Notes: a model not told the origin generated them from the letters alone. 64,000 bases of DNA from Macrostomum hystrix (GCA_950097015.1 CATNEN010000034.1:1-64000), one strand, 5' to 3'. Counted from the stretch's first letter, positions 1 to 64,000 are shown. A program made the numbers and translations.

Positions 1-74
1 GTGGTCTGAATTGGATCTAGTTTCCTGTTGTCTATGGTCTAAATTGGATATAGTTCCCTGTTGTCTGAAATGGG

Positions 75-470
75 TAATGAGTATCGGGTTAAGGGTAATG
101 AGCATTGGATAGGGGAATGAGCAACGGAGAAGTATGAGCATCGAGAAGTGTTGAGCATTCGGAACGGGTAAGTGAGCAACGAAGAAGGGTTATGAGCATT
201 GGATTAGGGTAATGAGCAATCGAGAGGGTAATGGGCAACGAGAAGGGGTAATGAGCAACAGAGAAGTGCAATGAGCATTAGGGAAGGGTAATGAGCAACG
301 AAGAAGGGTTATGAGCATTGGAGAGGGTAATGAGCATCGGAGAGGGTAATGAGCATCGGAGAGGACCTAATGAGCATCCGAGAGGGTTATGAGCATCGGA
401 GAGGGTTATGACCATCGGAGAGGGTAATGAGCATCAGAGAGGGTTATGAGCATCAGAGAGGGTTATGAGC
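75..470. repeat. Degenerate ~19-20 bp minisatellite (gagggtaatgagcatcgga) in a DDX27 intron
   Basis: Directly visible tandem units. Confidence 0.9.
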
Positions 471-533
471 AGTTGGTACAAAGACTGGCAGGGACGTTAA
501 AGAACTAATGTGGAATACAGAAACGAATCTCAC

Positions 534-711
534 CTGTCTGGTAGGTGAGCACAGGCGGACAATTTTCTTTAATCTGCTCAATGAAGAACTCGTCAATAAG
601 CTTGTCAGCTTCGTCTAGCACCAGGATTCAATGTTGCGCAGGTGAAAAACTTGGCGCATTGTGCGCGTGATCGATGAGTCGGCCTGGAGTGGCAACGACA
701 ATGTCCGGGCC
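534..711 (-). CDS. DDX27: DDX27 exon 2 (motifs Ib and II); the gene continues beyond the left edge of the window
   Basis: Acceptor ttttcaag, then GPDIVVATPGRLIDH..LVLDEADKL..IVRLCSPTRQ across indels. Donor GTGAG at 533-529. Confidence 0.8.
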
Positions 712-806
712 CTTGAAAAAAAGGAAATTAAAACAAGAACATTTTGGTTCAAGCCGAAAATTACTAGTTTATTAAGACCAACAACAGCCTGTAGAAGTAC
801 ACTGAC

Positions 807-1753
807 CTGCCTGAGCGCAGCCTCCTGGCCTCTCAGATCCAAAACCGCCGGCCGAGAGGCTCAGCGACACCCGCCTGCCGCAGTAGCGCAGCAGCTGCTC
901 AGCCACGCTGTGGATCTGCACCGCCAGCTCCCTGGTGGGGCTCAGCACCAGGACTCGGGTCACGGGCGGCCCGGCCGGCTTATAGAGCAGGCGCTCGATG
1001 ACAGGCAACGAAGGCGGCCGTCTTGCCGCTGCCGGTGCGGGCGCAGGCGCAAGATGTCGCGCCCGGCCAGGGCACGGGAATGCAGGCCGCCTGGATTGGC
1101 GTCGGGCGCGGCCAGGCGAGCTCGGCCAGGGGCTCGGTGCAGCGGCCGGGATAGGTTCAACGCCATGGAAGCTGGAGCACGGCCGGCAGGTCCGGCTTGT
1201 CGATCTCGTCGGCGAAGCCCGGCGTAGCGGACGCGCCGGCCCGTTTGCGAGCCTTCTTGGCCTTCAGCTTGGACTTCGTCGGCGTCGACCAAGTCAGATC
1301 GACGGCGACTGCAGCGGCAGGTTCCGTCAGGTCCTGATCCGCGTCCGGCTCGATTCTGCCGGCTTCCGAAGACTCCTGCAGTCGGCGCTGAATGAGAGCG
1401 TCGACGCTGGTCTTCTCGCCGTGGGCTCGCAGTCGAATAGGCTCGCCAGGCGGCTCTGGCTGGGGATACGGGTGGGGAGGCTTCGCTGCGGACGCCGCCG
1501 GCAGGTCGAATTTGAAGTCGGGATTCAGCGCGACTTCTTCGTCATCGTCGTCGTTATCAGCGTCGGTGTCTTGCTTATCAAGGCTTTCGTCTCGCATAGA
1601 GATATCGGCTGACTCCTGCTGCTGCTGCTGTTGCTGGCGCAGCTTCCTCTTGGCACCAGCTTTCTGCTGCTTCTTTTTCTTCTTCGCGTCACGCCGGCTG
1701 TCTAGCGGTGCCTGGCCGGCAGGCCGGGAAGGCTTTACTGGCTGCGGCTTCAT
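807..1753 (-). CDS. DDX27: DEAD-box RNA helicase DDX27/Drs1, coding exon 1 (about 6 single-base indels near 990-1180)
   Basis: K/D/E-rich N-terminus (NPDFKF). Across frameshifts it reads SFHGLNLSRPL..PTPIQAACIP..GRDICACARTGSGKTAAF, then LPVIERLLYKP..TRVLVLSPTRELAVQ (Q motif, motifs I and Ia). Donor GTCAGT at 806-801. Confidence 0.85.
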
Positions 1754-12898: not shown

Positions 12899-14337
12899 TT
12901 GTCTGAAAATTAAATTTTTCGAAAGGCAGTCAGGAAAGTGTATTCACCGAAATTCGAAACTTAAGTGCATTTAGCCTAGATGGGTGAATTTATGCCCTAA
13001 AAACTGCACAACTATTTGAAAAATACTAATAATAGTATAATTTTACCATTACACATCATGTTAGAGTACAACTACCAACAAAAACCTAAAATTTCTGCAA
13101 ACTGTTAACGCTCTATTAATTATACTTCCTGTAAAAAGAGTGATAAAAGGCAAGTAAAAACTGAAATACGTTTAAACAAAAGCTTAAAAAATTGACGACC
13201 TCACTTAGCTTTTATATTTGAGCAGAAAAGGCAAATAAGCTTAACGAAAAGAACTTTGGTAGCCAAAAATAGGTACTCATAGCTTGGCCATGAAAATCAA
13301 ATGCTGAAGTATATTTTGCCAAGAGTAAACATACAATCACATGGCCACTGCTGATATATAAAGAAGTAGTGGCAGCACTAACAATGAAATGTCCTTTCTT
13401 TTACATCACATTATAATACTTTTATGAAAGAAAGAACGCATTTTAATGGCTAGTCTAGAAGTAGATGCTAATCGAATGTTTCAGAAATACGGAATAGCTG
13501 AAACATTCCCTGACTATTCACCAAACATACATCAAACAAACCCAATGAGCTCCTATGCCAGTTGTTGTTTTGTGGTGTCCTTTTTAAGTTGAGTACCTCG
13601 CTTCGAATTTCTTACTTGAACACCTTAATGAATCTACACACAATAGACAAACAGAATGTGTGCATGTAAGGAACCTTGGATCGGAAACAATGCTCTGACA
13701 CACAGACTCACAGAGAAAGTGAGCAGCGCTTCGACTGAGGATTAAAATTCGTTATCTTCGGTTCCATGGGCCGTAGCCATTGCTTATGTTAGCTGAAATT
13801 CGAAATCAGAAATGTACCAGATGTGCTTTCATTTTACAGGTGAAGTTTATCTATCAAAGTAGCTAGTGGCCAAGTGGTTCAAGCTCAGAACTTCTAAGAC
13901 GCTTTGAACTTTGAGCCAATAAATGAAACAAACCAAGTGCTACACCAAGACATGGTGACAATACTTAATATGATATAAGGGCTGTCTGATTAAAAAGCAG
14001 GTGCTTTTAAGAAAATGCCTTATGATTAGGTTTGGCCAGGACTGGCATCAAGGTTTTGTTACAGGTAGACTTGCTATTTCTAAAAGTCAAATCAATAATT
14101 GCTGGTTACAGATTTTAGACACAACTGCAAAGGTAAAGACTGTCTATGAGCTATGAGCAGGTAGAAAACATTTTCCCATTTTACCCTTTATGAAGGCTTA
14201 AAAACTCAATCTTTCTATGGACAAAGAGGGTTACTCAAATTTCTTCCTCAATTAATATTGGCATATAAAATTTAAAGCTTATTGTCAATGAAATGAATCA
14301 ATAGGGAATCCAGGTACTTTGTTGAATGACATGCAGA

Positions 14338-14647
14338 GGTTGTAGCCTAGTGGTTAGGGCGTCGGACTCACGACTTGAAGGTCGGGGGTTCGATTCCCGA
14401 CTCCACTGGAACAATTTGCATCCTTTAGCAAGACACTTAACTCTGCATTGCTTCAGTTCACCCAGCTGTTAAATGGGTACCAGCATCAGCTGGGATAATT
14501 GAAGGTGGGTGTGGCGTCCCCCCAGTCCGAGGACTGAACAGCTGTACACAGCCTTCAGATGCGCCGCGCATTAGCTGCGGCTGTGCTGTCGGCTGCACAT
14601 CTGACCCAATTGGGGCAGGTGTAATCAATTATTATTATTATTATTAT
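14338..14647 (+). mobile_element. tRNA-derived CORE-type SINE with (ATT)n tail
   Basis: A box TAGCCTAGTGG, B box GGTTCGATTCC, and CCTTTAGCAAGACACTTAACTCTGCATTGCTTCAGTTCACCCAGCTGTTAAATGGG resembling the MIR/CORE block; ATT tail. Confidence 0.85.
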
Positions 14648-18537: not shown

Positions 18538-18783
18538 TCACGCCTGGTCCAAGTCGATTCGCCGTTTCAGCACAGCCAGTGCCTCCTTTGGCGTCAGCGA
18601 GGCCACGCCCTGGTCCAGCAGCATCCGCAGCGGATCCTCGCCGTCGCGCGGCGGTCCGGCCAGCGCCTGGCGCAGCAGCGCCGCCGTACCCCGAGCCAGG
18701 CCAAGCAGGCAGCAGGCCTGGGCGCTCTCGGCCAATAGGCGATCTGGCCGGCCGCAGTACTGGGCAAATACCGGCATGAACAC
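18538..18783 (-). CDS. RINT1: RINT1/Tip20 exon 7 (last)
   Basis: VFMPVFAQYCGRPDRLLAESAQACCLLGL matches the RINT1 C-terminus (LFPLFSHYCKRPE..EACIVLNL). Acceptor ctgcag at 18784-18785. Confidence 0.85.
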   Translation of the reverse strand: MFMPVFAQYCGRPDRLLAESAQACCLLGLARGTAALLRQALAGPPRDGEDPLRMLLDQGVASLTPKEALAVLKRRIDLDQA

Positions 18784-18865
18784 CTGCAGTGATTATTTAT
18801 AAGGACTTGCTCAATGCTTTAAGAATCATTTGTACACTGAAAGATACATGTAGATGTATACATGC

Positions 18866-19016
18866 TGTGACATTCTGTCTAAGACAGATGTAAGTTATCT
18901 GAGGCTACTGAGAGCCAGAGTGCAGAAATCTGCCCGCGCGCGGTGCGCACATTGTCTATTTATAGCCATTGGCCAAAACGGGGTGGTACAAATATATTAC
19001 GTAGGAAAGCCTCACA
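18866..19016 (-). repeat. 3' LTR (151 bp) with CCAAT and TATAAATA; polypurine tract GGTGGAGGG immediately internal (19017-19025)
   Basis: Direct repeat of 23481-23631. Confidence 0.95.
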
Positions 19017-19168
19017 CCCTCCACCAAAAGTTCGAAAATCGCTCCAAATCAAACGGCATGAAAACACACAGACCAAAATTTAACTGTACGCTAGAAAAAA
19101 ACACTTCAAACAATTAACCAACATGAGCGAATTGAAAGTCATTGTCACTGTTTGTCATTCAAGATCAA

Positions 19169-22100
19169 TCACTTGGTCGGACTCCAAAGCCGACTCAGGC
19201 CATCCGCGGCGCCGTTGCTCTCGCCCGGCTGGTACTGGATCGCATAGTCGAAGCCCGACAGGTAGTGGGCCCATCGCTGCAGCCGCGGGTTGGCGTGGTC
19301 CAGTTGCAGGTACTGCAGCGGCTTGTGGTCCGACCGGATGATGAAGTGGCGCCCAAGCAGATAGTGCCGCAGTTTCTCGACCGCCCAGCGCACGGCGAGG
19401 CACTCCTTCTCGATGGTCGCGTAACCTTGCTCCGCCGCCGTCAGCCGCCGAGACACGAAGAGCACCGGGTGAATGCCGTCCTCAAACTCCTGCGTCAGCA
19501 CCGCTCCGAGGCCGGTCTCCGAGCTGTCCGTCTCCAGGATGAAAGGCCGGCCGTAGTCCGGGGCGCGCAGCACCGGCTCGCTTGTCATCAGTGCCTTGGC
19601 CACCTCGAATGCTCGCGTGTGCTTCTCGCCCCAGGCCGCCGTCAGGTCCTCGGGCGTCGTTCTCCTGGTGAGCTCCGTCAGTGCCGCCACCTGGTCCGCG
19701 TAGTTCGGGATGAACCGGCGATAGTGGTTGAGCACGCCGAGCACCGATCGCAGCTGAGTCTTGGTTCGGGGTTGCTCAAGCGCCTTGATTGCCCGTACTC
19801 GGTCCTCGCTGGTGCTGATCTCGTCGTTTCCCAGCTTAAATCCGAGGTAGTCCGTCGAGGTGCCGCCTAGAAAGCATTTGCGTGGCTGGACAGTTAGCCC
19901 AGCTGCTTTCAGCCGATTGAAAACTCGCCGTAGATCTTGCAGGTGCTGCTCGAACGTCTCGCTAAACACGGCGATGTCGTCGATGTAGGACTCCGCACTG
20001 TCGATTCCGAGAAGCACCTTGTCCATCAGCCTCTGGTAGGTGGCGCTACTGCAGTTCAGTCCCATAGGCAGCACAGTGAACTGATACAGCTTGCCATTGG
20101 CCGCGAATGCTGTCAGCCGCTTGGAGTTTTCGGCCAGCGGGATCTGCCAGTAGCCCTTGCAGCAGTCGAGCTTGGATATGAACTTAGCCTTCGCGACGCT
20201 CTCCAGCAGGTCCTCGATGTTCTTCATCGGGTAGGAGTCGAAAGCCACCAGCTCATTGAGCGCCTTGAAGTTGACGGTGAACCGAACTGAGCCGTCCTTC
20301 TTGGCTACCAGACACACCGGGGAGCAGTAGTCGCTGTCGGACGGTTCGATGACACCCAGGTCCAGCATACGCTGAACCTCGTCCTGCAGAACTTGCCGGT
20401 ATGCCTGCGGCTCCCGCCGCGGCCGGATGCGCACCACCTGGTTAGACGTTGTTCGAATTCGATGCTCCATCAGGCTCGTCCTGCCGGGGGTCTCGCTGAA
20501 GACATCTTTGAAGTCGCAAACCAGACTGTCTAGGAGCCGCTTCTGCCCGAAGTTCAGAGTGTCGGCCAGCTCCGGCAGGCCTGACTTCCTTTGTGCTGAG
20601 TCGATCTGGTCTGCCTTCCGAGTCGTTGCCAACAAGATTGACTCTCGCGAGTTATACTTCTTCAGCAGGTTGATGTGAAACACATTCGTATTCTTGCCGA
20701 TTCTAATCCGATAGTTCACGTCGTTGCACTTCTCCAGGACCTCATAGGGGCCTCGCCATTCAGCATGCAGCTTCGTGGATGACGACGGCAGCAGCAGCAG
20801 CACTTGATCACCCGGCGCCAGCTCCCTCTCGCGAGACCTCCGGTCATACCAGTGCTTCCACCGCTTTCTTTCCAGCTCCTCGTTACTTCTTGACGCCTCC
20901 AGCCCTGCCTGCAGCCGGTCTCGTTGGGCCAGGACAAAGGTGATGATGTCCTTCTTCTCCGCGGTCAGCTTCTCGTCCCACGTCTGTCGCAGCAGATCCA
21001 GGGGTCCTCGGACAGTCCGGCCGTAGAGCAGTTCGAATGGTGAAAACCCAGTAGTCTCATTCGGAACCTCCCTGATAGCAAATAACAGGTATGGCAGGTA
21101 GAGGTCCCACTTCTTTTTTTCGCGGGCTGGTAGCCTTCGGAGCATAGTCTTGAGTGTGCCGTGAAATCGTTCCACAAGCGCCTGGCTTTGCGGGTGGTAC
21201 GGCGTTGACTGAATGCCTTCAACTCCAGTGCATTGGTACAAGGCCTGCAGCAACGCTGACGAGAAGTTCGTGCCCTTGTCGCTTTGGATCTCCTTTGGGA
21301 AGCCAGTTCTTGAGAAGCAGTCGATCAGCGCCTTGGCCACCGTTTCGGCGTCGATATTCCGCAGCGGAAAGCCCTCCGGGAACCGGGTCGCTGCATCGAT
21401 CACGGATAAAATGTACTTGTGGCCGCTTGAGGACTTCGGATACGGTCCGCTGATGTCAATGATCACCTTGCTGAAGGCTTCTTCTACTCCTGGTACTTGC
21501 ACGAGCGGTACTTTTTGAGTGCAACCGATCCGAGCAGTCTTCTGACATTTGTCGCAAGTAGTCACGAAGTCCTTGACGTCTTTGGCCACGGTAGGCCACC
21601 AGAATCGTTGCAGCAACCGCTGGCTCGTCTTCTTGACACCCAAATGTCCTGCGAAGGCACTCTCGTGAGCCTGAGTCAGCGCCGTCAGCCTGAGAGACTT
21701 TGGTAGCACTAGTTGGTCTTCGCCTGCTGCTTGGGTCCGGTAAAGCCGACCGTTAACCTTTATGATGGCATCGTTGTCGCGCAACTTCTCCAGCATTTCT
21801 CCGTCCTCCTGGAGTGCCGCCTCGTAGTCCCAAGCCATTTGGCCGATATTGGGTTCCAGTTTCTCTCTGTACTCTTGCCGTTGTTTACGCGCTTGGGCTC
21901 TGGTCAGTCTAGGCCTTTGTGTACTGGGGGGCTCCGGATCGATCTGGACTAGGCCGCTAGCCATAATGCCTTCGTCCGCGAGCGCTCTGTCCCCCTCGGA
22001 CTGGCGTATGGGGCAGACAGGAGCGCCCACCACCCCTTTCTCCTGATTGGCCGGAGGGTGCGGGTCTGCAGCCTGGGTCTCGTATGCAGTCTGGGCAGCG

Positions 22101-23488
22101 CCCGCAGCGTCAGTGGGGTTTTCGACCCCTGGGGCTAGCCGGCCAATCAAGTCTAATCCAATTAACGCGCTCACCGGTAGAGAGTCAGACACGCAGACAT
22201 CGGCAATTCCCTCAAAGCCGTTTAGGTGCAAATCCACTTTAGCAATAGGTAGCCGGTGTAGATCGCCTCCAAAGCATCGCAATAGTGCATGCCGCCCTGT
22301 CCAATTGATGTCTTCGGGGAGACAATTACGTCGAATTGTCGTTCGATCCGCTCCAGTGTCTAGGAGGAATTCCAGATCCTTGCCACTTGCCTTCCCCTTA
22401 ATCATTCTGGTCCCTGTAGTGCTGGTGCCGACTTTCATGTCTTCCGAGGCCAGATGGATGCTGTTGTTCGGCTTATTCGGGCATTGGAACTTCTTGTGGG
22501 GGCCTCCGCAGTTAAAGCAGCTGATCTTCGTCTTCGACATTGGGGCTCTCTGAATTTCCCGGTGCCGGTCGGCATTGCTAGCCCTAACATGACTCACATC
22601 CTGTGTTTCCTGACTCCGTTGATCGTGAGTTCCGCCGTTTCTGTCGTTGCTGCGGGCCATATAATAGTCGTCCGCTAATTGAGCGGCCTCCTTGATGTTC
22701 TTCGGCTTCCTCTCTCGCATCCACACCTGGAGTCCTCTCCCCAGCGAGTCCGAGAATTGCTCCAGCAGCACCTTCCGTCTGATGATGGTGTCGCCTCCTC
22801 GCAGCTCCTCACGCTCATCCTCGTCCACTCCAGCGGTCATCCATCGATCGAATAGGTCCTCCAGTTTCGCGGCGAACACTTGGTACGACTCCTCCGATGC
22901 CCTCCGCAAGGATCTGAATCGCTGCCGGTACGTCTCCTCGCCAATGTTATACCGCGCCAGGATTGCCGCCTTTGCCATCTCATAGTCCGCAATCGCTGCT
23001 GTCGTCAGGCTGTGGAATGCACTTTGCGCCTTGCCCGTCAGCAGTGGTCCAAGTCGAATCGTCCAATCTTGCTTCTGCCATCCGCATGATGTTGCCGATC
23101 TCTCGAATGTCGCCAGAAATGACTCTATGTCGTCCGCGTCAGTCAGCTTGAACAGCTTTGGCTCCACGGTCTGCGGTCTCGGCTTGGACTCGGCCATGAG
23201 TCTGGCGAATTCCGCCTGCTGTCGTGCTAGCTGCTCCAGATAGAATGCCGACTGTCTCTCCTGAGCCTGTGCCATGTCCTGAAGTTGCCGACTCTGGTGC
23301 GTCAAGATCAGCTTCATCGTCTCCATGAGGTTGGCACTATCTATTCCGCTCAGTTCCTCGCTTTCAGTGGCACCAGTCTCCATCTCTGCCGAGCTCGTCC
23401 TGTTGGAGGCTGCAGATTCGCCTGTTGTATCTCTGGATCGCAGGTTGTATGGCTTAGTTGAGCCTGCACCGCTGCCACCATGTGACAT
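19169..23488 (-). CDS. Gag-Pol polyprotein, 1439 aa: SCAN-like capsid, CCHC knuckle, aspartic protease, integrase, RT, RNase H
   Basis: ETYRQRFR..LLEQF..LQVWMRERKP (SCAN-like); CFNCGGPHKKFQC; LLDTGAD; H-x6-H..CDKC with D,D,E core (IDISGP, QSDKGTNF, VERFHGTLK); GPY; YIDD; TDSSETGLGAVL..EKECLAV..SDHKPL. Confidence 0.97.
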   Translation of the reverse strand: MSHGGSGAGSTKPYNLRSRDTTGESAASNRTSSAEMETGATESEELSGIDSANLMETMKLILTHQSRQLQDMAQAQERQSAFYLEQLARQQAEFARLMAESKPRPQTVEPKLFKLTDADDIESFLATFERSATSCGWQKQDWTIRLGPLLTGKAQSAFHSLTTAAIADYEMAKAAILARYNIGEETYRQRFRSLRRASEESYQVFAAKLEDLFDRWMTAGVDEDEREELRGGDTIIRRKVLLEQFSDSLGRGLQVWMRERKPKNIKEAAQLADDYYMARSNDRNGGTHDQRSQETQDVSHVRASNADRHREIQRAPMSKTKISCFNCGGPHKKFQCPNKPNNSIHLASEDMKVGTSTTGTRMIKGKASGKDLEFLLDTGADRTTIRRNCLPEDINWTGRHALLRCFGGDLHRLPIAKVDLHLNGFEGIADVCVSDSLPVSALIGLDLIGRLAPGVENPTDAAGAAQTAYETQAADPHPPANQEKGVVGAPVCPIRQSEGDRALADEGIMASGLVQIDPEPPSTQRPRLTRAQARKQRQEYREKLEPNIGQMAWDYEAALQEDGEMLEKLRDNDAIIKVNGRLYRTQAAGEDQLVLPKSLRLTALTQAHESAFAGHLGVKKTSQRLLQRFWWPTVAKDVKDFVTTCDKCQKTARIGCTQKVPLVQVPGVEEAFSKVIIDISGPYPKSSSGHKYILSVIDAATRFPEGFPLRNIDAETVAKALIDCFSRTGFPKEIQSDKGTNFSSALLQALYQCTGVEGIQSTPYHPQSQALVERFHGTLKTMLRRLPAREKKKWDLYLPYLLFAIREVPNETTGFSPFELLYGRTVRGPLDLLRQTWDEKLTAEKKDIITFVLAQRDRLQAGLEASRSNEELERKRWKHWYDRRSRERELAPGDQVLLLLPSSSTKLHAEWRGPYEVLEKCNDVNYRIRIGKNTNVFHINLLKKYNSRESILLATTRKADQIDSAQRKSGLPELADTLNFGQKRLLDSLVCDFKDVFSETPGRTSLMEHRIRTTSNQVVRIRPRREPQAYRQVLQDEVQRMLDLGVIEPSDSDYCSPVCLVAKKDGSVRFTVNFKALNELVAFDSYPMKNIEDLLESVAKAKFISKLDCCKGYWQIPLAENSKRLTAFAANGKLYQFTVLPMGLNCSSATYQRLMDKVLLGIDSAESYIDDIAVFSETFEQHLQDLRRVFNRLKAAGLTVQPRKCFLGGTSTDYLGFKLGNDEISTSEDRVRAIKALEQPRTKTQLRSVLGVLNHYRRFIPNYADQVAALTELTRRTTPEDLTAAWGEKHTRAFEVAKALMTSEPVLRAPDYGRPFILETDSSETGLGAVLTQEFEDGIHPVLFVSRRLTAAEQGYATIEKECLAVRWAVEKLRHYLLGRHFIIRSDHKPLQYLQLDHANPRLQRWAHYLSGFDYAIQYQPGESNGAADGLSRLWSPTK
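23467..23480 (-). other. Primer-binding site TGGTGGCAGCGGTG, complementary to the tRNA-Leu (AAG/TAG type) 3' end
   Basis: Directly abuts the 5' LTR. 14-nt complement of ...CACCGCTGCCA-CCA, recalled from vertebrate tRNA-Leu. Confidence 0.8.
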
Positions 23489-23631
23489 TCTGTCTAAGAC
23501 AGATGTAAGTTATCTGAGGCTACTGAGAGCCAGAGTGCAGAAATCTGCCCGCGCGCGGTGCGCACATTGTCTATTTATAGCCATTGGCCAAAACGGGGTG
23601 GTACAAATATATTACGTAGGAAAGCCTCACA
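23481..23631 (-). repeat. 5' LTR (151 bp)
   Basis: Direct repeat of 18866-19016; followed on the minus strand by the PBS. Confidence 0.95.
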
Positions 23632-23897
23632 CATGCATACATGTTTGATGCACTAATCCATGGACTAGGGCTGTTTCATCCTGCTGGTAGCCATTATACA
23701 GCTGGGTGTACTGAATCTATGATAATCACTTTAAGTGTATCTCTCAGGGCAAAAATTGTTTACCTTGTGCTGGAATAGGACCAAGACTCCTAAGCCCCTA
23801 TCATGAATAGTTGCATACTGCACACAGGGGGGGTGAGTGGCAGAGCTGTTAACGCGTTTGCCTGTCTGCCAATGTCCCAGAATCATCGAAAGCCCAC

Positions 23898-24306
23898 CTT
23901 AGTGACGGTGTGCGCAAAGTGCAGTCCGCCAGCGTGGCTGAACCGCATGCCCAGCAGCTGCCGCATGAGCAGCCGGTTGAGTCCGGCCGCCAGGCGGCGC
24001 CAGACTGGCCGGAAAACCGCCGGCTGCAGGCGGTCCCGGCAGGTCTGCAGAGAGTCGCGAACGGCCAGGAACAGCGCGGCCAGAGCCGGAGCGTCGTCCG
24101 GCCGGCTGGACAGGAAAGCGTCCGGGGCGAGGCTCTCCAGCAGGGCGGCCAGCTGGTCTAGGATGCCGCGGACCAGGGAGTCCAGCAGCTCGGACTGGGT
24201 GGCCGCCAGCCGTTTGGCCACCGGCGCGAAGACTCCGGCGCTGGAAGTGTCATCGATGACGCCGACGACGGCGCCCACAGAGAGCTCGGCGACGGCTGTC
24301 GGTTGC
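23898..24306 (-). CDS. RINT1: RINT1 exon 6
   Basis: ...VRDSLQTCRDRLQPAVFRPVWRRLAAGLN..RFSHAGGLHF. Canonical AG/GT; phase consistent with neighbours. Confidence 0.85.
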
Positions 24307-24452: not shown

Positions 24453-24667
24453 CTGCCAGCGTCCTCATCAACTGTCGCTGTAGAAGCCGAAGACGCAGCA
24501 GCAGCGGCGGAGGCAGCCCCGTGAATCGCCCGCTCGGACTCCGGCAGCTGTGCCAGTTCGGCATAGTTGAGCTGGTCGGCCCAATCTGTGAGGGAGTCCC
24601 TGGCAAACTGCAGACTGTTCAGGGCGCCGAACCAGCGCGGATCCGAGGTCGGGTAGCGGCGGGTCAC
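24453..24667 (-). CDS. RINT1: RINT1 exon 5
   Basis: LNSLQFARDSLTDWADQLNYAEL resembles the RINT1 LNAVNYI..LADWADNVFFLQL segment. Donor GTGAGT. Confidence 0.8.
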
Positions 24668-24984: not shown

Positions 24985-25408
24985 CTGTCGCAGGCGGACC
25001 CGGAAATCATCCAGCACGTCCAGTTGCACCCTGAATAGTTGGGCTCGCCGCTTCAAATCGGAGCGCAGCAGGCCGGCCCGGCCGCCCAGCGCCTGTACAA
25101 GGGCCAGCACCGCCTCGGCGCATTGCGGCACAGTCGTCGAGGACGTCGGCTGGCCAGTGACAGCTACGAAGGCGCCGCCAGCCGGACTCCAGGCTCCGCC
25201 AGCCAGCATGATTTCGTCCAGCCTGGCCTGGGCAAACTTGGTTTCGAGGCCCACCCACCAGGCCAGCCAGAGCGGCTCGCCGAGGATGCCGCCAACTGAG
25301 GCCGCGGCAGCCGACAGGCCGGCGGCGTTGAGTTCGCGGTCCAAGGCGAGCAGCTCGTTGATGAGGTGAGCCAGACGAAGATCGGCCTCCTCCTTGTCTG
25401 GCAGCTCC
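24985..25408 (-). CDS. RINT1: RINT1 exon 4
   Basis: AHLINELLALDREL..ETKFAQARLDEIM..VPQCAEAVLAL..QLDVLDDFRVRLRQ. Donor GTGAGC. Confidence 0.88.
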
Positions 25409-26374: not shown

Positions 26375-26535
26375 CTGTACTGTTCCAGTAGTTGGCGCAG
26401 CTTCCGTTTCACTAGCTCCATCAGGCCGGACGCAAATTCTTGTCGCACATCCCAGGCGGACATGCCCACCTGGTCCAGGCAGGGCTGCACCACCTGGACT
26501 AAGAAGGCTTCGTGCTCCTTCAGCCATTTCAGCAC
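26375..26535 (-). CDS. RINT1: RINT1 exon 3
   Basis: VLKWLKEHEAFL..VQP..RQEFASGLMELVKRKL. Phase 0 in and phase 2 out, matching exon 4. Confidence 0.82.
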
Positions 26536-27525: not shown

Positions 27526-28047
27526 CTGGGTGAGGAAGATCTCCGGCCTGGCCGGATCGTTAGTGGGCCGGTCGCCGGAGAAGTGAAAGGCGAATCTCTT
27601 GCGAAACGGCTCCAGCATGAGTTCCAGTGGTGGCAGCGACCGCCCGGCCGCCTCCGCCGGCACCTGCAGCTGGGCGAAGCGGCGGAAACTGACGACAAAG
27701 TCTCTCTCCTTAGCGCCGGTGGTGCCCGCAACGACTGTTCCGACGGCGGAGGCGGCGGCGGGGGCGGCCAGGGCGGCATTGTCAGTCAAAGCGGCGCCGA
27801 CGGTGCCGCTGTTGAACGGCCAGCCGATGGCGCGAAGAGCGGCGGAGAATTCGGCGCAGAATTTCCTACGCAACAGGCCGGCCCAGTGGTCCACAATGGC
27901 CTCGGCATCGTTTAGAAGCTCAACAGAATCGGTCTCGGCCAGGCAGGCCGGCGGTCGGAGATCCCGGCGCAGCAGGGCCAGCCGGCGGAACTGCTCGGCG
28001 GCCCGGTCGAAGCTGCCGGCAACAAGGGCGGCCTGCACGGCGCTGGC
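27526..28047 (-). CDS. RINT1: RINT1 exon 2
   Basis: IGWPF..LELMLEPFRKRFAFHFSGDRPTNDPARPEIFLTQ, the RINT1/TIP20 signature RFxYHFxGxRxTN..KPE. Confidence 0.9.
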
Positions 28048-28194
28048 CTGCGGCAGTGGCGGGGGGAAGGCGGATACAAAAAACTGATTTGAGCCTGGTG
28101 GTGGCCCCTGGCAACCTCAATAAGTATATGTGACGCAATGCGCATATTGACCAGACACCACGTACAGACACACCCAGGAAACCATTGAGACACC

Positions 28195-29150
28195 CTGACA
28201 CACACAAAAACCACCAGACATCCACAGACACAGCTGGACACCCACAGACACGGCCGGACACCCACAGACACAGCCGGACATCCACAGACACAGCCGGACA
28301 CCCACAGACACAGCCGGACACCCATAGACACAGCCGGACACCCATAGACACAGCCGGACATCCACAGACACAGCTGGACACCCACAGACACGGCCGGACA
28401 CCCACAGACACAGCCGGACATCCACAGACACAGCCGGACACCCACAGACACAGCCGGACACCCATAGACACAGCCGGACACCCATAGACACAGTAACACA
28501 CCCACAGACACAGCCGGACATCCACAGACACAGCCGGACACCCACAGACACAGCCGGACACCCACAGACACAGCCGGACACCCATAGACACAGCCGGACA
28601 CCCACAGACACAGCCGGACACCCACAGACACAGCCGGACACCCACAGACACAGTAACACACCCACAGACACAGCCGGACACCCACAGACACAGCCGGACA
28701 CCCACAGACACAGTAACACACCCACAGACACAGTAACACACCCACAGACACAGCCGGACACCCATAGACACAGCCGGACACCCACAGACACAGCCGGACA
28801 CGCACAGACACAGTAACACACCCACAGACACAGCCGGACACCCACAGACACAGCCGGACACCCACAGACACAGCCGGACACCCATAGACACAGCCGGACA
28901 CCCATAGACACAGCCGGACATCCACAGACACAGCTGGACACCCACAGACACGGCTGGGCACCCACAGACACAGCCGGACATCCACAGACACAGCCGGACA
29001 CCCACAGACACAGCCGGACACCCACAGACACAGCCGGACACCCATAGACACAGCCGGACACCCACAGACACAGTCAGACACCCACAGACACAGTTGGACA
29101 CCCACAGACACGGCTGGGCACCCACAGACACAGCTGGACACCCACAGACA
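28195..29150. repeat. 20-bp minisatellite (cccacagacacagccggaca) in RINT1 intron 1
   Basis: Visible tandem units; source of the spurious Cys/Val-rich ORFs. Confidence 0.95.
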
Positions 29151-29151
29151 C

Positions 29152-29562
29152 CAGAGACCGCTGCAATCTAACCTGACACTCGAGCTGTTCCCGAAGTCGC
29201 AGCGCTTCCAGTCGCGCCTCCGCGACGTCCAGCTCGGCAGCCCGCTCGGCCAGGCCGCCATCAAGCAGCAGCGGCCGGCACTCGACCAGCTGTCGCTGAC
29301 AGTCGCCGGTCAGCTTGGCGTGCAAAGCCAACAGCTCACAGACTTCGGCCTGCAACTGTCTACAGGCCAGACGGGCCTGGCCGAAGGTCGTGCACTCGTG
29401 CAGGCCGGCCTGCTTGCGCAACAGTTCGAGTCGCTCTGCCGACTCGCGGAGCAGGCTGGGCGCGAACTCGCGCACCGATTCCACAGTTGGCAGCCGCTCG
29501 TTCAGCTGCTTGGTCAGCTCCGCCGACAGAGCAGCTGAGATTGGCGATGTCAACGGATGCGA
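29152..29562 (-). CDS. RINT1: RINT1 exon 1 (coiled-coil N-terminus); starts after a 3' splice acceptor and contains no ATG
   Basis: Acceptor ttccgtctcccccgcAG (29564-29563), then TCG CAT CCG TTG... open for 137 codons. The seven exons sum to about 795 codons, close to full-length RINT1. The donor position is less certain. Confidence 0.7.
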
Positions 29563-29579
29563 CTGCGGGGGAGACGGAA

Positions 29580-31398
29580 CTGGCTGTAGGATTGATGGGA
29601 CTGGCTGTAGGATTGATGGGACTGCCTGTAGGATTGATGGGACTGGCTGTAGGATTGATGGTACTGGCTGTAGGATTGATGGGACTGCCTGGAGGATTGA
29701 TGGGACTGGCTGTAGGATTGATGGGACTGTAGGATTGATGGGACTGGCTGTAGGATTGATGGGACTGTAGGATTGATGGGACTGTGGGATTGATGGGACT
29801 GTAGGATTGATGGGACTGTAGGATTGATGGGACTGTAGGATTGATGGGACTGTAGGATTGATGGGACTGTAGGATTGATGGGACTGTAGGATTGATGGGA
29901 CTGTAGGATTGATGGGACTGTAGGATTGATGGGACTGTATAGGATTGATGGGACTGTAGGATTGATGGGACTGTAGGATTGATGGGACTGTAGGATTGAT
30001 GGGACTGTAGGATTGATGGGACTGTAGGATTGATGGGACTGTAGGATTGATGGGACTGTAGGATTGATGGGACTGTAGGATTGATGGGACTGTAGGATTG
30101 ATGGGACTGTAGGATTGATGGGACTGTAGGATTGATCGGACTGGCTGTAGGATTGATGGGACTGGCTTTACGATTGATGGGACTGGCTGTAGGATTGATG
30201 GGACTGCCTGGAGGATTGATGGGACTGGCTGTACGATTGATGGGACTGGCTGTAGGATTGATGGGACTGCCTGGAGGATTGATGGGACTGGCTGTACGAT
30301 TGATGGGACTGTAGGATTGATGGGACTGTACGATTGATGGGACTGTAGGATTGATGGGACTGGCTGTACGATTGATGGGACTGTAGGATTGATGGGACTT
30401 GCTGTAGGATTGATGGGACTGGCTATAGGATTGATGGGACTGTAGGATTGATGGGACTGGCTGTAGGATTGATGGGACTGGCTGTAGGATTGATGGGACT
30501 GGCTGTAGGATTGATGGGACTGTAGGATTGATGGGACTGTAGGATTGATGGGACTGTAGGATTGATGGGACTGGCTGTAGGATTGATGGGACCGTCTGGA
30601 GGATTGATGGGACTGGCTGTACGATTGATGGGACTGTAGGATTGATGGGACTGTAGGATTGATCGGACTGGCTGTAGGATTGATGGGACTGCCTGGAGGA
30701 TTGATGGGACTGGCTGTACGATTGATGGGACTGGCTGTAGGATTGATGGGACTGCCTGGAGGATTGATGGGACTGGCTGTACGATTGATGGGACTGTAGG
30801 ATTGATGGGACTGTACGATTGATGGGACTGTAGGATTGATGGGACTGGCTGTACGATTGATGGGACTGTAGGATTGATGGGACTTGCTGTAGGATTGATG
30901 GGACTGTACGATTGATGGGACTGTAGGATTGATGGGACTGGCTATAGGATTGATGGGACTGTAGGATTGATGGGACTGGCTGTAGGATTGATGGGACTGG
31001 CTGTAGGATTGATGGGACTGGCTGTAGGATTGATGGGACTGTAGGATTGATGGGACTGTAGGATTGATGGGACTGTAGGATTGATGGGACTGTAGGATTG
31101 ATGGGACTGGCTGTAGGATTGATGGGACCGTCTGGAGGATTGATGGGACTGGCTGTACGATTGATGGGACTGTAGGATTGATGGGACTGTACGATTGATG
31201 GGACTGTAGGATTTATGGGACTGGCTGTACGATTGATGGGACTGTAGGATTGATGGGACTGGCTGTAGGATTGATGGGACTGGCTATAGGATTGATGGGA
31301 CTGTAGGATTGATGGGACTGGCTGTAGGATTGATGGGACTGCCTGGAGGATTGATGGGACTGTAGGATTGATGGGACTGGCTGTACGATTGATGGGAC
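29580..31398. repeat. 17/21-bp mixed minisatellite (ggattgatgggactgta / ggattgatgggactggctgta) between ALDH2 and RINT1
   Basis: About 1.8 kb array ending within ~20 bp of the RINT1 acceptor. Confidence 0.95.
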
Positions 31399-31888
31399 TA
31401 TAATTTTTTCTAGGCAATTCTTATCGAATGAAGGCATGGTAAGCTCTTGCGTACAGGTCTGCATTCATGCATTTGCGGGTAACAAAAATTAAAGCAAAGG
31501 TAAATTAGAATACAGGCAGCAGAGAAAAGCACAAACGAGGCCCAGTTACTGTTTTATTTAAAGCCGTGATTTTAAATTGTTTCAACAACTGCTTACTGCA
31601 CTAAAACTAGCTTCACAAAACGGAAATAGATAACAACAGACATAATGAATGATAATGGCCCAGAAGACTGAACAGGTGCCAAGAGAGTGGCAAAAGATAT
31701 ATAGAGTATGTTTATCTATTTAGCCGAAAGAGGGACGCAAGGCAAGGAATAACCGCTCATTCCTCGCAATTGTAATGATTTTCAAGTCGAAATAAAACTT
31801 TCTCCTAATTTAAAAAGTAGCCTCTTGTCACAGATGCCAGTCTGTTTTATGGAGCAGTCAGGCCAGGTGAGCCGCAGTTTTAGGTGCT

Positions 31889-32221
31889 TCAGCTGTTCTT
31901 CTGGTCCAGCCGGATCATGACGCACTTCACCTCGGTGTAGGCCTCCAGGCCGTACTCGCCCAGCTCGCGTCCGCTGCCGGACATCTTGAAGCCGCCGAAC
32001 GGCGCCGCGGCGTCGAAGTGGTCGTACTCGTTGATCCAGACGGTGCCAGCCCGGAGGCCCTGCATGACGTGCATGGCCTTGTCCAGGTCCTTGGTGAAGA
32101 TGCCGGCCGCCAGGCCGTAGACGGTCTTGTTGCCGCGCTCGATCAACTCGTCGACGGATTTGAACTTCATGATCTGCATCACCGGGCCGAAGATCTCCTC
32201 CTGGGCGATGCGCATCTCGTC
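31889..32221 (-). CDS. ALDH2: Mitochondrial aldehyde dehydrogenase, exon 5 (last)
   Basis: [45 protein letters not shown]. Confidence 0.93.
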
Positions 32222-32349
32222 CTGGTGGGATTTGGGATAAATTGGGATTTGGGGAATTGTCATTACGAGCGTAGTAGCTAAATAAACATTAACACAATAT
32301 GAGCAAGAATTAAGGAATTCCAGTTCATAGATTTGAGCATAGAACTCTC

Positions 32350-39968: not shown

Positions 39969-40424
39969 TCATTGAGCCGCTCCGTTTTTAAGCGCCGTCT
40001 CGTCAGCAAGCTGGCGAAGCTGTCTCAGAAAATTGGCATTCGGACAGGCGGCCGGCCGGACGGCCTTGACCTGCGCCAGGGCCGCCTCGAAGGCGAGGCC
40101 GCGTCGCAGGATCAGGTAGGCGACGGCGAACGCCGGCGCGCGCGAGACTCCGGCGTTGCAGTGCAGCAGGCAGACGCCGCCAGCCGACCGGCAGGCGTCG
40201 ATAAAGTCAGCGGCGCTGTCAAGGTGGGGCCGCAGCTGCTGCCGGTCGGTATCGAGGACGGCCAGCTGGAGCCGGTCGGTCAGCCGCAGCCCGGGCGGGG
40301 GGCTCGGCTGCACCGCCGGGTAGGCCACGTTGATCACGTGACTGATGCGATAGCGGCGCAGCGTCGGCCCGTCGGCTGCGGCATCCTGCGAGCCAACCAG
40401 AAGGTGGGGAAGGACGCAGCCCAC
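39969..40424 (-). CDS. DUSP19: Atypical dual-specificity phosphatase DUSP19, exon 2
   Basis: VGCVLPHLLVGSQDAA..HVINVAY..HCNAGVSRA..VKAVRPAACPNANFLRQL; active-site HCxAGxSR. Confidence 0.92.
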   Translation of the reverse strand: MGCVLPHLLVGSQDAAADGPTLRRYRISHVINVAYPAVQPSPPPGLRLTDRLQLAVLDTDRQQLRPHLDSAADFIDACRSAGGVCLLHCNAGVSRAPAFAVAYLILRRGLAFEAALAQVKAVRPAACPNANFLRQLRQLADETALKNGAAQ

Positions 40425-40474
40425 CTGCCGCAAAATGAGTGTCAGGAGGAGGATATTCAGAGCTCCACTCCACT

Positions 40475-41190
40475 CCACTCCACTCCACCCATTCGACTCC
40501 TCTCATCTGCTCTCTTGTCCACTCAAGTCTACCCTAGTCTAGTCCACCCCACTCCACTCCAATGCACCCCACTTCACTCCAATGCACCCCACTCCACTCC
40601 AATGCACCCCACTTCACTCCAATGCACCCCACTCCACTCCAATGCACCCCACTCCACTCCAATGCACCCCACTCCAATACAACCCACTCCACTCCACTCC
40701 AATACAACCCACTCCACTCCAATACAACCCACTCCACTCCAATACAACCCACTCCACTCCACTCCAATGCACCTCACTCCACTCCAATACAACCCACTCC
40801 ACTCCACTCCCATAAAACCCACTCCAATACAACCCACTCCACTCCACTCCAATACAATCCACTCCACTCCACTCCACTCCGATGCACCCACTCCACTCCA
40901 ATGCACCTCACTCCACTCCAATGCACCCCAATCCGCTCCAATGCACCCACTCCACTCCAATGCACCTCACTCCACTCCAATGCACCCCACTCCACTCCAA
41001 TGCAACCCACTCCACTCCACTCCAATACACCGCACTCCACTCCAATGCAACCCACTCCACTCCACTCCAATACACCGCACTCCACTCCAATGCAACCCAC
41101 TCCACTTAACTCCTCTTATCTCATCTCATCTAATCTCATCTCATTTCATTTCATTTCATCCTATCTCCTCTCCTCTCTTCTCCTCTCCGC
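40475..41190. repeat. (CACTC)n-based pentamer repeat grading into ATCTC/TTTCA, in the DUSP19 intron
   Basis: Visible. Confidence 0.9.
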
Positions 41191-62100: not shown

Positions 62101-62869
62101 TGCATTGTTTTAGCGTGAAAATGAATATTTATGGTCAATTAAAGATGATTCAATTAATGAAATCAATATTTTTGTTGAAAAAATCCTATGTCTATCGTTC
62201 TACGTTTAACTTCGTTCTACGAAAGCTTCGAAATTGAAATCGCGGACTGCAGGCGATTTCACGAAGGCCAAAAAAACAACGCGTCGTCTCCTAGGAGCAA
62301 AAATCGGATGCGGAAAGTCGGCAGCCAAATAATGGGATCAATTGAACAACGAAAGGTAGAAGATTAGAAGGACAAAGAGTAATGGAATGGAAACCTGACT
62401 CTGCCCCCCTGCTCATTAGGATAAGTACAGATCAAAATACAGCATAGTAGTCTCTATTCCATCCACTTCTGCATTCTAATTTCACCGCGTTGCCTCCTTT
62501 ACAGCCCCGCTCCCCGCAGCTCCTCCTTAACTCCCCCAAGCACCCGGAATTGTCTCCAATATCCCAGGCTAAATACCCTCAGTAGACTGATCACCCTTTG
62601 TTGCAGCTGGCAATCTGTTAGAAGGATGAGAAATAGGACGCGTGTGGGAACCCCACCTGCTATAGCTGCTGCTGCTGCTGCTGCTGCCGCTAATGAGGAA
62701 AAGACCTGCAGCCTTTAGACTTACTAATTTACGCCTACCTTCCCTGGCATTTAAACCTCGCTTTACTCTTAATGCTTAAATCTGTTTTGTTTCTCACTAT
62801 GTACTCATTCTCGCGCTGCTTTTTTCCGCCTTGACTCTATTCTCCTATTTGTGTCCTCCTTTATTAAAT

Positions 62870-63030
62870 TATATTGGGACCGAGAGGTCGGAAGTTCGAG
62901 TCTTAGCCCAAGGTGTGAAATCATATCACCGAGTATGAGTCATGACACTCACTTCTCCATTTCTTCAGTTCATCCAGTATGTAAAATGAGTACAAGCATC
63001 CCCTGGGGTAGAAATTAGGGTGTCCATGTA
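62870..63030 (+). mobile_element. Old, degenerate CORE-type SINE fragment
   Basis: B-box-like gaagttcgagtc and cactcacttctccatttcttcagttcatccagtatgtaaaatgagtac, similar to the 14440-14480 CORE block. Confidence 0.55.
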
Positions 63031-64000
63031 CTTAACCCTTTCTATTTATCCCAGGGTTGCAAAACGTCGCCAGTTTTGCGCCAAAAAAATTTATCCGCCG
63101 AATTAGCGATCGAACAAATATTTTTTATCATACATAAGCAACATGTTTTCAGACATTAAATGCACTTATCTACCTGTGCGAGTATTGCCGAAGTCACAAC
63201 AGAATACACAGTTGTACCCAGACAGGCAAGGTGAATGAGTGCTCAGATAACACAGGCTGTCAAGTAGACAGACAACATCCATGCCTCACTCAGAGCCCAC
63301 TACCATTTATCCTGCACCGGCGAGTCCTATCGAGCACCGCCCCCCCCTCCCCCAGCTAAGCCCTTCAGCGCCCGCCCACGCAAGAGTCTGCATCTTCCAG
63401 CAGAAGAGAGCGAAGCTAGAGTGTGCCCACCTAAACTGAGCCCGAGAGACAGAGACAGGTGGGAAGCCGCGAGAGACTAAGGGGGAAAAAGGAAAAATTG
63501 GGAAATGGATACGAGCTTGGCTGTATTATTCGCACAGCCAAAAAAGTGAGGGAATAAGAGAGAAAATAGGTGCGCTAAGACATAAAGAGTTGCATCAAAG
63601 TGTACCAATATTTTTGGCGTTGTGGTACACTACATTTTCTTTAGGGCTAGAAAAAATGTGCTTGATCTAGGTCCCAGCTTTAACTAAATTGTTTGGTAGA
63701 ATAATCACACGATTATAATTTCATAGCGGTTAGTGTGAATCTTTATGCTATTATAAGTAGTATAAGTTGCACATAAATACAAGTTATATGCAAAACGCAT
63801 GAAATACAAAGAGAGTTTGTATTTGCAAGTAATACAAAAATCTCTTGTACAGATTTCTTATCCTGGTATCCAATATTCGCCCAGGTACTGAAGCAATAGG
63901 TCATTTATAGCTATATAATAATAGCTATATTATTATATAGTTAGGGGACAGAAACAGCACATAGACAGCGCACAGATGGCGCACAGACAGTGCACAGACG

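What the first reader, a model, noticed from the sequence alone, without database searches (positions are those of the whole stretch)
29152..31890. RINT1 has no cis start codon: possible ALDH2-RINT1 operon with the initiator AUG supplied by a spliced leader
Seen: RINT1 exon 1 begins right after a clean acceptor (ttccgtctcccccgcAG|TCG CAT CCG TTG) in phase 0. The first in-frame ATG is about 280 codons downstream, yet the seven exons already total about 795 codons. Upstream there is only a 1.8-kb minisatellite, a U-rich tract and the ALDH2 3' end (AATAAA near 31555) on the same strand. Established: flatworm spliced leaders end in AUG, and in Schistosoma that AUG can act as the initiator; RINT1 is about 790 aa. 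Inference: SL-AUG joined to TCG gives M-S-H-P-L-T..., so RINT1 would be a downstream cistron whose translation depends on trans-splicing, with a satellite as the outron.
Basis: partly seen in the sequence, partly recalled or inferred. Interest (0 to 1): 0.78.

Follow-up and report, generated by a model that had tools for sequence, protein, structure and literature searches.

The report
RINT1 start codon donated by spliced leader
In the flatworm Macrostomum hystrix the membrane-traffic gene RINT1 has no start codon of its own, and transcripts show that the AUG ending the trans-spliced leader supplies it; this mechanism has been known in flatworms since 2006, so the case is well documented but ordinary.

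Summary

- **Genome:** the window is from Macrostomum hystrix. Assembly size and contig number match the published assembly exactly.
- **Gene:** RINT1 lies on the minus strand in seven exons (788 codons). Exon 1 (29562-29173) has no in-frame ATG. The first in-frame ATG is codon 274.
- **Transcripts:** cDNA contigs from three public runs of one study match exon 1 without a mismatch. At the predicted acceptor they carry the spliced-leader tail ...TTATTGCATG, which reads AUG-UCG-CAU-CCG (M-S-H-P). They also join exon 1 to exon 2.
- **Leader source:** the leader is not in the window. Its genes lie elsewhere, with ATG|GTAAG.
- **Sister species:** M. lignano RINT1 starts at the same acceptor, also without ATG. 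Codons 1-36 have dN/dS 0.24.
- **Operon (plausible, unproven):**
  - ALDH2 lies upstream on the same strand.
  - The 1.8-kb satellite is private to this locus and is present in the RNA runs.
  - The repeat-adjusted spacer is about 174 nt, inside the published M. lignano operon criterion.
  - ALDH2->RINT1 adjacency is conserved in M. lignano.
  - No read bridging the two genes was seen.

The scan has already confirmed leader-donated start codons at other loci of this genome (POP5 and others). This is a new member of a known kind.

The parts
31889..32263 (-). ALDH2 (mitochondrial-type aldehyde dehydrogenase) last coding segment, stop TGA at 31891-31889
   Evidence: Pfam Aldedh, E 8.5e-40, profile positions 359-461 of 461; sequence
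31535..31888 (-). ALDH2 3' UTR with the only AATAAA of the spacer at 31558-31553; the cleavage site is inferred about 15-25 nt downstream
   Evidence: the poly(A) site itself was not observed
31400..31534 (-). Unique T-rich spacer between the ALDH2 poly(A) signal and the satellite.
29584..31399 (-). Locus-private minisatellite (17-20-nt units, TCCCATCAATCCTACAG on the sense strand), part of the RINT1 outron or intercistronic region
   Evidence: TRF. The unit is found only here and in an identical assembly duplicate on C40. Satellite contigs are present in RNA runs X2 and X3.
29563..29583 (-). Trans-splice acceptor: pyrimidine tract ccagttccgtctcccccgcAG
   Evidence: The SL-exon 1 junction lies here in contigs of X2, X3 and X4. 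The acceptor position is conserved in M. lignano.
29173..29562 (-). RINT1 exon 1, 130 codons, no in-frame ATG; the first codon TCG follows the leader's AUG
28048..29172 (-). RINT1 intron 1, with a 20-mer satellite at 28217-29151
   Evidence: TRF; exon 1-exon 2 joint read from the contigs' loose end
27526..28047 (-). RINT1 exon 2 (174 codons); holds the first in-frame ATG, codon 274 of the gene
26375..26535 (-). RINT1 exon 3
   Evidence: Pfam; tblastn with the M. lignano orthologue and splice sites
24985..25408 (-). RINT1 exon 4
24453..24667 (-). RINT1 exon 5
23898..24306 (-). RINT1 exon 6
18538..18783 (-). RINT1 exon 7, with stop TGA at 18540-18538. Intron 6 (18784-23897) holds an intact gypsy-type retroelement ORF (19169-23488).

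Best explanation
RINT1 of Macrostomum hystrix is a spliced-leader (SL) trans-spliced gene whose start codon comes from the leader.

Shown:
- The pre-mRNA carries an outron that includes at least part of the private 1.8-kb minisatellite.
- The SL RNA is encoded elsewhere, in about 11.6-kb tandem arrays and dispersed genes, and reads ...TTATTGCATG|GTAAG. It gives its 5' exon to the acceptor at 29563|29562.
- The leader's last three bases, AUG, then lie in frame before TCG CAT CCG.

Inferred:
- Translation yields a 789-residue RINT1 (M-S-H-P-L...).
- Without trans-splicing, no full-length RINT1 can be made. The next AUG is out of frame, and the next in-frame AUG is codon 274, after the N-terminal coiled-coil region.
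- The pre-mRNA most likely arises by transcription running on from ALDH2, a two-gene SL-resolved operon whose spacer was inflated by a satellite. I put this at about 55%. The main alternative is a promoter of RINT1's own.
For: -: contigs of 1680-1769 nt from runs X2, X3 and X4 match 29172-29563 with 0 mismatches. Beyond 29563 they continue with 24 letters that are the reverse complement of CTGCGAAGACTCAATTTATTGCAT. The G at 29563 is shared with the leader's final G. At the other end they continue into exon 2, so they are spliced cDNA.
- this 25-mer occurs 28 times in the genome and never in the window. L001 and L006 show it preceded by cggtctctta and followed by gtaagac, which is an SL RNA gene.
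- the sequence is identical to the 35-nt M. lignano SL printed in PMC8629364.
- PMC10468722 gives the same assembly size and contig number. It states that the Macrostomum SL ends in an ATG start codon.
- there is no in-frame ATG before codon 274.
- the M. lignano orthologue starts at the homologous acceptor (ccccag|TCGCAG), also without ATG, and is filed as 'partial'.
- codons 1-36 have dN 0.14, dS 0.60 and dN/dS 0.24, like the rest of exon 1. Similarity is lost just upstream of the acceptor (24 of 60 bases).
- Cheng et al. 2006, as summarised in PMC9851317, found more than 40 Schistosoma cDNAs that need the SL AUG.
- Operon part:
  - the repeat-adjusted spacer is 174 nt, against the 1-kb repeat-adjusted rule and the roughly 100-bp mode in M. 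lignano;
  - the satellite is private and transcribed;
  - ALDH2->RINT1 is kept at two M. lignano loci.
Against: - The runs' library type is not on record. That they are RNA is deduced from the spliced, SL-bearing contigs.
- All three runs come from one study.
- Contigs cannot exclude minor isoforms.
- Translation from the SL AUG was not measured. Its context (U at -3, U at +4) is weak by vertebrate rules.
- For the operon:
  - no bridging transcript was seen;
  - the raw spacer is about 2 kb, above the 300-bp rule of PMC12582326;
  - the strand of the satellite RNA is unknown;
  - X4 showed no satellite contig;
  - a DSPc gene upstream of ALDH2 is conserved too, so the conserved adjacency may only reflect general microsynteny;
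  - whether ALDH2 is itself trans-spliced is unknown.
Confidence: 0.88

Rival explanations
1. The same SL-donated AUG, but RINT1 is monocistronic. Its own promoter lies in the roughly 150-nt unique spacer, in the ALDH2 3' UTR or inside the satellite, and the satellite is simply its outron.
For: - Most SL trans-spliced genes in M. lignano (about 60%) are not in operons.
- M. lignano has about 1.1 kb of unique AT-rich sequence upstream of the RINT1 acceptor that could hold a promoter.
- For pairs of a non-trans-spliced gene followed by a trans-spliced one, the distance distribution is unimodal, with no operon peak.
Against: - In M. hystrix only about 174 nt of non-repeat sequence separates the ALDH2 poly(A) signal from the acceptor.
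- The pair meets the published operon criterion.
Confidence: 0.4
2. RINT1 has an unrecognised upstream cis exon that carries an ATG, for example 31472-31455 spliced to 29562.
For: The 18-nt candidate ATG...CCT|GT would be in frame with exon 1.
Against: - All three assembled transcripts carry the SL at the acceptor, not this exon.
- The spacer shows no similarity to the M. lignano spacer.
- The M. lignano annotation also starts at the acceptor.
Confidence: 0.04
3. The leader's AUG is not used. Translation starts at the first in-frame cis AUG (codon 274) or at a non-AUG codon, giving a truncated RINT1.
For: - The SL AUG has a weak context.
- GenBank PAA84081.1 was modelled from an internal Met.
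Against: - Codons 1-36 and 37-130 are under purifying selection in frame from the first codon (dN/dS 0.24 and 0.19).
- A scanning ribosome that skipped the SL AUG would first meet an out-of-frame AUG at 29261.
- Starting at codon 274 would delete the whole region upstream of the RINT1_TIP1 domain.
Confidence: 0.05

Closest known systems
[quoted passage not shown]
   Same: The leader ends in AUG. It is joined in frame to an ORF that lacks its own start, so the gene depends on trans-splicing for translation.
   Different: The species is different (a free-living macrostomid) and so is the gene (RINT1). Translation was tested experimentally in Schistosoma; here it is only inferred from codon conservation.
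Macrostomum lignano SL trans-splicing and repeat-inflated operons (Ustyantsev & Berezikov 2021, PMC8629364)
   Same: The 35-nt leader is identical. The downstream gene is trans-spliced. The spacer consists mostly of a tandem repeat, and the repeat-adjusted distance of about 174 nt is near the roughly 100-bp mode.
   Different: That paper defines operons by distance alone. The acceptor here is CCGCAG rather than the enriched [T/C]TNCAG. No polycistronic RNA was seen here.
Caenorhabditis elegans SL2 operons
   Same: An upstream poly(A) signal, then a U-rich spacer, then a trans-splice acceptor of the downstream gene on the same strand.
   Different: Macrostomum has a single SL, with no SL2-type specialisation. 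Nematode leaders do not end in AUG. The C. elegans spacer is about 100 nt, against 2 kb raw here (for the comparison figures).
Parasitic-flatworm candidate operons, e.g. cytochrome b-c1 subunit 7 - enolase (PMC12582326)
   Same: Same-strand gene pairs resolved by an AUG-ending SL, with some pairs conserved across species.
   Different: The threshold used there is 300 bp or less, and this pair fails it in raw distance. The authors themselves call that threshold conservative and report spacers of several kb.

Membership tests
SL trans-spliced mRNA (Macrostomum SL) | The leader sequence is at the 5' end of the mature transcript, joined at an AG acceptor | tested here: met
   24 loose letters plus the shared G equal the SL 3' end, at 29563|29562, in contigs of three runs
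SL trans-spliced mRNA (Macrostomum SL) | The leader is not encoded in cis. It comes from an SL RNA gene with a GT donor directly after the leader. | tested here: met
   0 matches in the window even with 3 mismatches. 28 genomic copies; L001 and L006 read ...GCATG|gtaagac... and match the M. lignano SL.
SL trans-spliced mRNA (Macrostomum SL) | Acceptor motif [T/C]TNCAG, enriched at M. lignano trans-splice sites | tested here: inconclusive
   The site reads CCGCAG in M. hystrix and CCCCAG in M. lignano. CAG is kept but the T is absent. The motif was found at only 9551 of 21754 sites in the source paper.
SL-AUG-initiated ORF (slORF) | The leader ends in AUG, and that AUG is in frame with the conserved ORF at the junction | tested here: met
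   ...GCAUG|UCG CAU CCG UUG; exon 1 is in phase 0
SL-AUG-initiated ORF (slORF) | No cis AUG is available to start the conserved N-terminal coding region | tested here: met
   No in-frame ATG in exon 1, nor in 551 open codons upstream. The first in-frame ATG is codon 274.
SL-AUG-initiated ORF (slORF) | The coding constraint begins at the first codon after the junction | tested here: met
   dN/dS 0.24 for codons 1-36 against M. lignano. Similarity is lost immediately upstream.
SL-AUG-initiated ORF (slORF) | Initiation at the SL AUG is shown by ribosome footprints, a reporter or an N-terminal peptide | not testable with these tools
   No ribosome-profiling or proteomic data were available
SL-resolved operon (ALDH2-RINT1) | Adjacent genes on the same strand, with the downstream gene trans-spliced | tested here: met
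SL-resolved operon (ALDH2-RINT1) | Short intercistronic distance | tested here: inconclusive
   174 nt after repeat removal, which meets the repeat-adjusted rule of under 1 kb in PMC8629364. About 1990 nt raw, which fails the 300-bp rule of PMC12582326.
SL-resolved operon (ALDH2-RINT1) | A polycistronic precursor RNA spans both genes | not tested
Only satellite contigs of unknown strand were seen.
SL-resolved operon (ALDH2-RINT1) | Gene adjacency is conserved in a related species | tested here: met
   Aldedh->RINT1 is on the same strand at two M. lignano loci, L009 and L010. A DSPc gene further upstream is also kept, so this is weak evidence.
RINT1/TIP20 family | RINT1_TIP1 domain (PF04437) covering the C-terminal two thirds of a protein of about 790 residues | tested here: met
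   Exons 2, 3, 4, 6 and 7 hit profile positions 2-37, 36-89, 128-223, 312-433 and 439-514 of 514. The model has 788 codons.

The most novel reading that the evidence does not exclude
The private satellite is more than filler. 71 of its units end in an acceptor-like YYTAYAG, and 22 of these lie in frame with RINT1 and downstream of the last in-frame stop. The array could therefore act as a bank of alternative or decoy trans-splice acceptors. These would either titrate the leader or give N-terminally extended RINT1 isoforms. M. lignano independently carries an unrelated CAG-rich satellite just upstream of the same acceptor.
Probability: 0.07. Interest if true: 0.55.

Novelty: new member of a known kind. 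Interest (0 to 1): 0.27.

Why it matters
- RINT1 is a conserved subunit of the ER tethering complex (established knowledge). Here its translation hangs entirely on trans-splicing.
- That state is shared by two Macrostomum species separated by dS of about 0.7, so it is a stable arrangement and not a recent accident.
- Practically, such genes are mis-annotated. The M. lignano entries are marked 'partial' or cut back to an internal Met (626 instead of about 781 residues). Annotation pipelines for flatworms should add the leader's ATG.
- The locus also illustrates how a kb-sized private satellite can sit between a poly(A) signal and a trans-splice acceptor without disturbing expression.

Tried and rejected
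- **Word search with exon 1**: no hit. This was expected, because the length filter excludes full-length RINT1.
- **Rfam on the window**: only a tRNA at 14336-14405, and no SL RNA gene.
- **The look-up of encoding contigs for P0001**: not on record. P0004 and P0002 worked.
- **Supplements of PMC8629364** and a paper search for RINT1 in M. lignano: nothing held.
- **blastn of the M. hystrix spacer against the M. lignano spacer**: no similarity, so the two satellites are independent.
- **Run X1** (organism A): a 247-nt contig at 97.6% identity stops 7 nt short of the acceptor and says nothing about the leader.
- **Upstream cis exon:** rejected as the main form.
- **Genomic-DNA contamination as the source of the satellite contigs:** rejected. 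Runs of 42-47 million letters cannot give 0.4-1x per copy on a 220-Mb genome.
- **Second biological RINT1 copy on C40:** rejected. It is 100% identical including the satellite and looks like a contig-end overlap.
- Exons were handled one by one by reference.

Full report
**Organism and locus**

The assembly that holds the window has 220,453,370 bases in 42 contigs. These are exactly the figures given for Macrostomum hystrix in Table 1 of Wiberg et al. 2023 (PMC10468722). Earlier notes of this scan say the same.

Both genes of the finding lie on the minus strand. Pfam places the end of an aldehyde dehydrogenase (Aldedh, E 8.5e-40) at 31889-32263. It places RINT1_TIP1 on five downstream ORF segments.

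**Checking the observation**

- The acceptor ...ttccgtctcccccgcag|TCGCATCCGTTG is at 29563|29562.
- Exon 1 (29562-29173) translates to 130 residues without a methionine.
- The only ATG in exon 1, in any frame, is out of frame at 29261. The RINT1 frame stays open for 551 codons upstream without an ATG, because the satellite unit contains neither stops nor ATG.
- I fixed the other exons with tblastn of the M. lignano orthologue and inspection of splice sites: 28047-27526, 26535-26375, 25408-24985, 24667-24453, 24306-23898 and 18783-18538. Together with exon 1 they give 2367 nt, or 788 codons plus the stop.
- The first in-frame ATG is codon 274.
- The tandem array spans 29584-31399.
- The only AATAAA of the spacer is at 31558-31553, and it is followed by a T-rich stretch.

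**Transcript evidence**

One search for sequencing runs found four small runs of one study (organism B) that hold about 80% of the words of exon 1 plus 78 upstream bases. Laying three of them, plus a run of a related organism, gave these results:

- Contigs of 1680-1769 nt cover 29172-29563 with no mismatch.
- Beyond 29563 they continue with 24 letters whose reverse complement is CTGCGAAGACTCAATTTATTGCAT. The G at 29563 is shared with the leader's final G.
- Beyond 29172 they continue with the start of exon 2. I confirmed the acceptor ...ccgcag|GCCAGCGCCGTG at 28047.

The contigs are therefore spliced cDNA. A de Bruijn contig can only contain this junction if reads span it, and three runs show it.

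**Where the leader comes from**

- The 25-mer is absent from the window, even allowing 3 mismatches.
- It occurs 28 times in the genome, partly in tandem arrays with a period of about 11.6 kb on C15, C17 and C42.
- Two fetched copies read cggtctcttaCTGCGAAGACTCAATTTATTGCATG|gtaagac..., which is a leader exon followed by a donor. Four others lack the donor and look like retro-copied leader relics.
- The 35 nt are identical to the M. lignano SL printed by Ustyantsev & Berezikov 2021 (PMC8629364).

**Is the leader's AUG the initiator?**

This step is inferred, from three arguments.

1. There is no alternative that makes a full-length protein. The next AUG is out of frame. The next in-frame AUG would delete everything before the RINT1_TIP1 domain.
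2. The same arrangement is found in M. lignano.
   - A search of 1.8 billion representatives with exon 1 found a single relative. Its cluster consists of M. lignano proteins.
   - PAA86945.1 (780 residues, filed as 'partial') begins SQSLTAPIPAALAAEL..., with no Met.
   - Its gene starts at ...gtgtccccag|TCGCAGTCG, the homologous acceptor, at two paralogous loci.
   - Another entry, PAA84081.1, was cut back to an internal Met (626 residues).
3. Between the two species, codons 1-36 show dN 0.143, dS 0.604 and dN/dS 0.24. This is indistinguishable from codons 37-130 (0.19). Similarity vanishes directly upstream of the acceptor, at 24 of 60 bases.

In Schistosoma the leader's AUG was shown to serve as initiator, and more than 40 cDNAs need it (Cheng et al. 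2006, as summarised in PMC9851317).

**The operon question**

Points in favour:

- ALDH2 and RINT1 are adjacent on the same strand.
- From the end of the poly(A) signal to exon 1 is 1990 nt, of which 1816 are the tandem array. That leaves 174 nt.
- In M. lignano, repeats were shown to inflate operon spacers. Operons were defined there by a repeat-adjusted distance under 1 kb, with a mode near 100 bp, and a non-trans-spliced first gene was accepted.
- The satellite unit occurs 144 times in the genome: 72 in the window and 72 in an identical duplicate on C40, and nowhere else. So the short satellite contigs in runs X2 and X3 (depth 3-16) must come from this locus.
- The 31-mer multiplicity there is 5-16. 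That implies roughly 0.4-1x per copy, a few per cent of the mRNA depth. Genomic contamination in runs of 42-47 million letters could not supply that much. The satellite is therefore transcribed, as expected for an outron or intercistronic RNA.
- DSPc -> Aldedh -> RINT1 is kept in M. lignano at two loci.

Points against, or still missing:

- No contig bridges ALDH2 and RINT1.
- The strand of the satellite RNA is unknown.
- X4 shows no satellite contig.
- The raw distance fails the 300-bp rule used for parasitic flatworms.
- The conserved DSPc neighbour suggests general microsynteny rather than an operon-specific constraint.
- M. lignano has over 1 kb of unique AT-rich spacer that could hold a promoter.
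- ALDH2 has its own ATG at 35966-35964, behind an AT-rich upstream region. Whether it is trans-spliced is unknown.

I put the operon at about 55% and an own promoter at about 40%.

**Comparison with what is known**

The mechanism is that of Cheng et al. 2006. The genomic setting is the one described for M. lignano in 2021. This scan has already followed up leader-donated start codons at other loci of the same genome: POP5, a mitochondrial TyrRS and a thimet-type peptidase. No paper in the library mentions RINT1 in Macrostomum. This is therefore a new, well-supported member of a known kind.

Its value is threefold: it shows conservation of an obligate SL-dependent start across two species, it exposes an annotation pitfall, and it is an example of a satellite-inflated spacer.

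**Limits**

Read-through from ALDH2 could therefore not be tested.
- Exons were searched one by one by reference.

Noticed in passing
L006:1500-2000 (G000:C15, tandem array of about 11.6-kb period; also C17 and C42): The SL RNA gene lies about 310 nt from a U1 snRNA gene (Rfam RF00003, 151.7 bits) on the same strand, inside a long tandem repeat. The single SL RNA gene copy on C1 (L001) has no U1 within 1.5 kb.
   Followed up: partly
window 67-31062 versus G000:C40:304651-335215: The start of contig C34 is duplicated near C40. Window 27673-31062 is 100% identical, satellite included, and window 67-1500 is 94% identical. Window 62500-64000 has no C40 copy. This looks like a contig-end overlap or residual haplotig, not a second RINT1 gene.
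   Followed up: partly
window 29584-31399 (-): 71 satellite units end in an acceptor-like YYTAYAG. 22 of these are in frame with RINT1 and lie downstream of the last in-frame stop (31215), so trans-splicing there would give N-terminally extended proteins. No leader junction was seen in the three units covered by the laid stretch.
   Followed up: partly
L009:9412-9890 and L010 (M. lignano NIVC01000257.1 and NIVC01000390.1): M. lignano carries an unrelated 28-mer satellite (CTCCCAGATCCTCAGTTGCTGAGCCAGC) ending about 110 nt upstream of the same RINT1 acceptor. Nearly every intron of ALDH2 and RINT1 in both species holds its own minisatellite.
   Followed up: partly
L002-L005 (G000:C3 and C7): These copies of the leader sequence are followed by non-donor sequence, and two of them share flanks.
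   Followed up: no
window 19169-23488 (-): An intact 1439-residue gag-pol ORF of a gypsy-type retroelement, with integrase before reverse transcriptase, sits in RINT1 intron 6 in the same orientation as the gene.
   Followed up: no
window 39969-40478 (-): A dual-specificity phosphatase-like ORF (HCNAGVSRAP motif) lies about 4 kb upstream of ALDH2 on the same strand. The same DSPc->Aldedh->RINT1 order is found in M. lignano.
   Followed up: partly
window 14336-14405 (+): A tRNA gene matched by Rfam at 31.8 bits, just above the gathering score.
   Followed up: no
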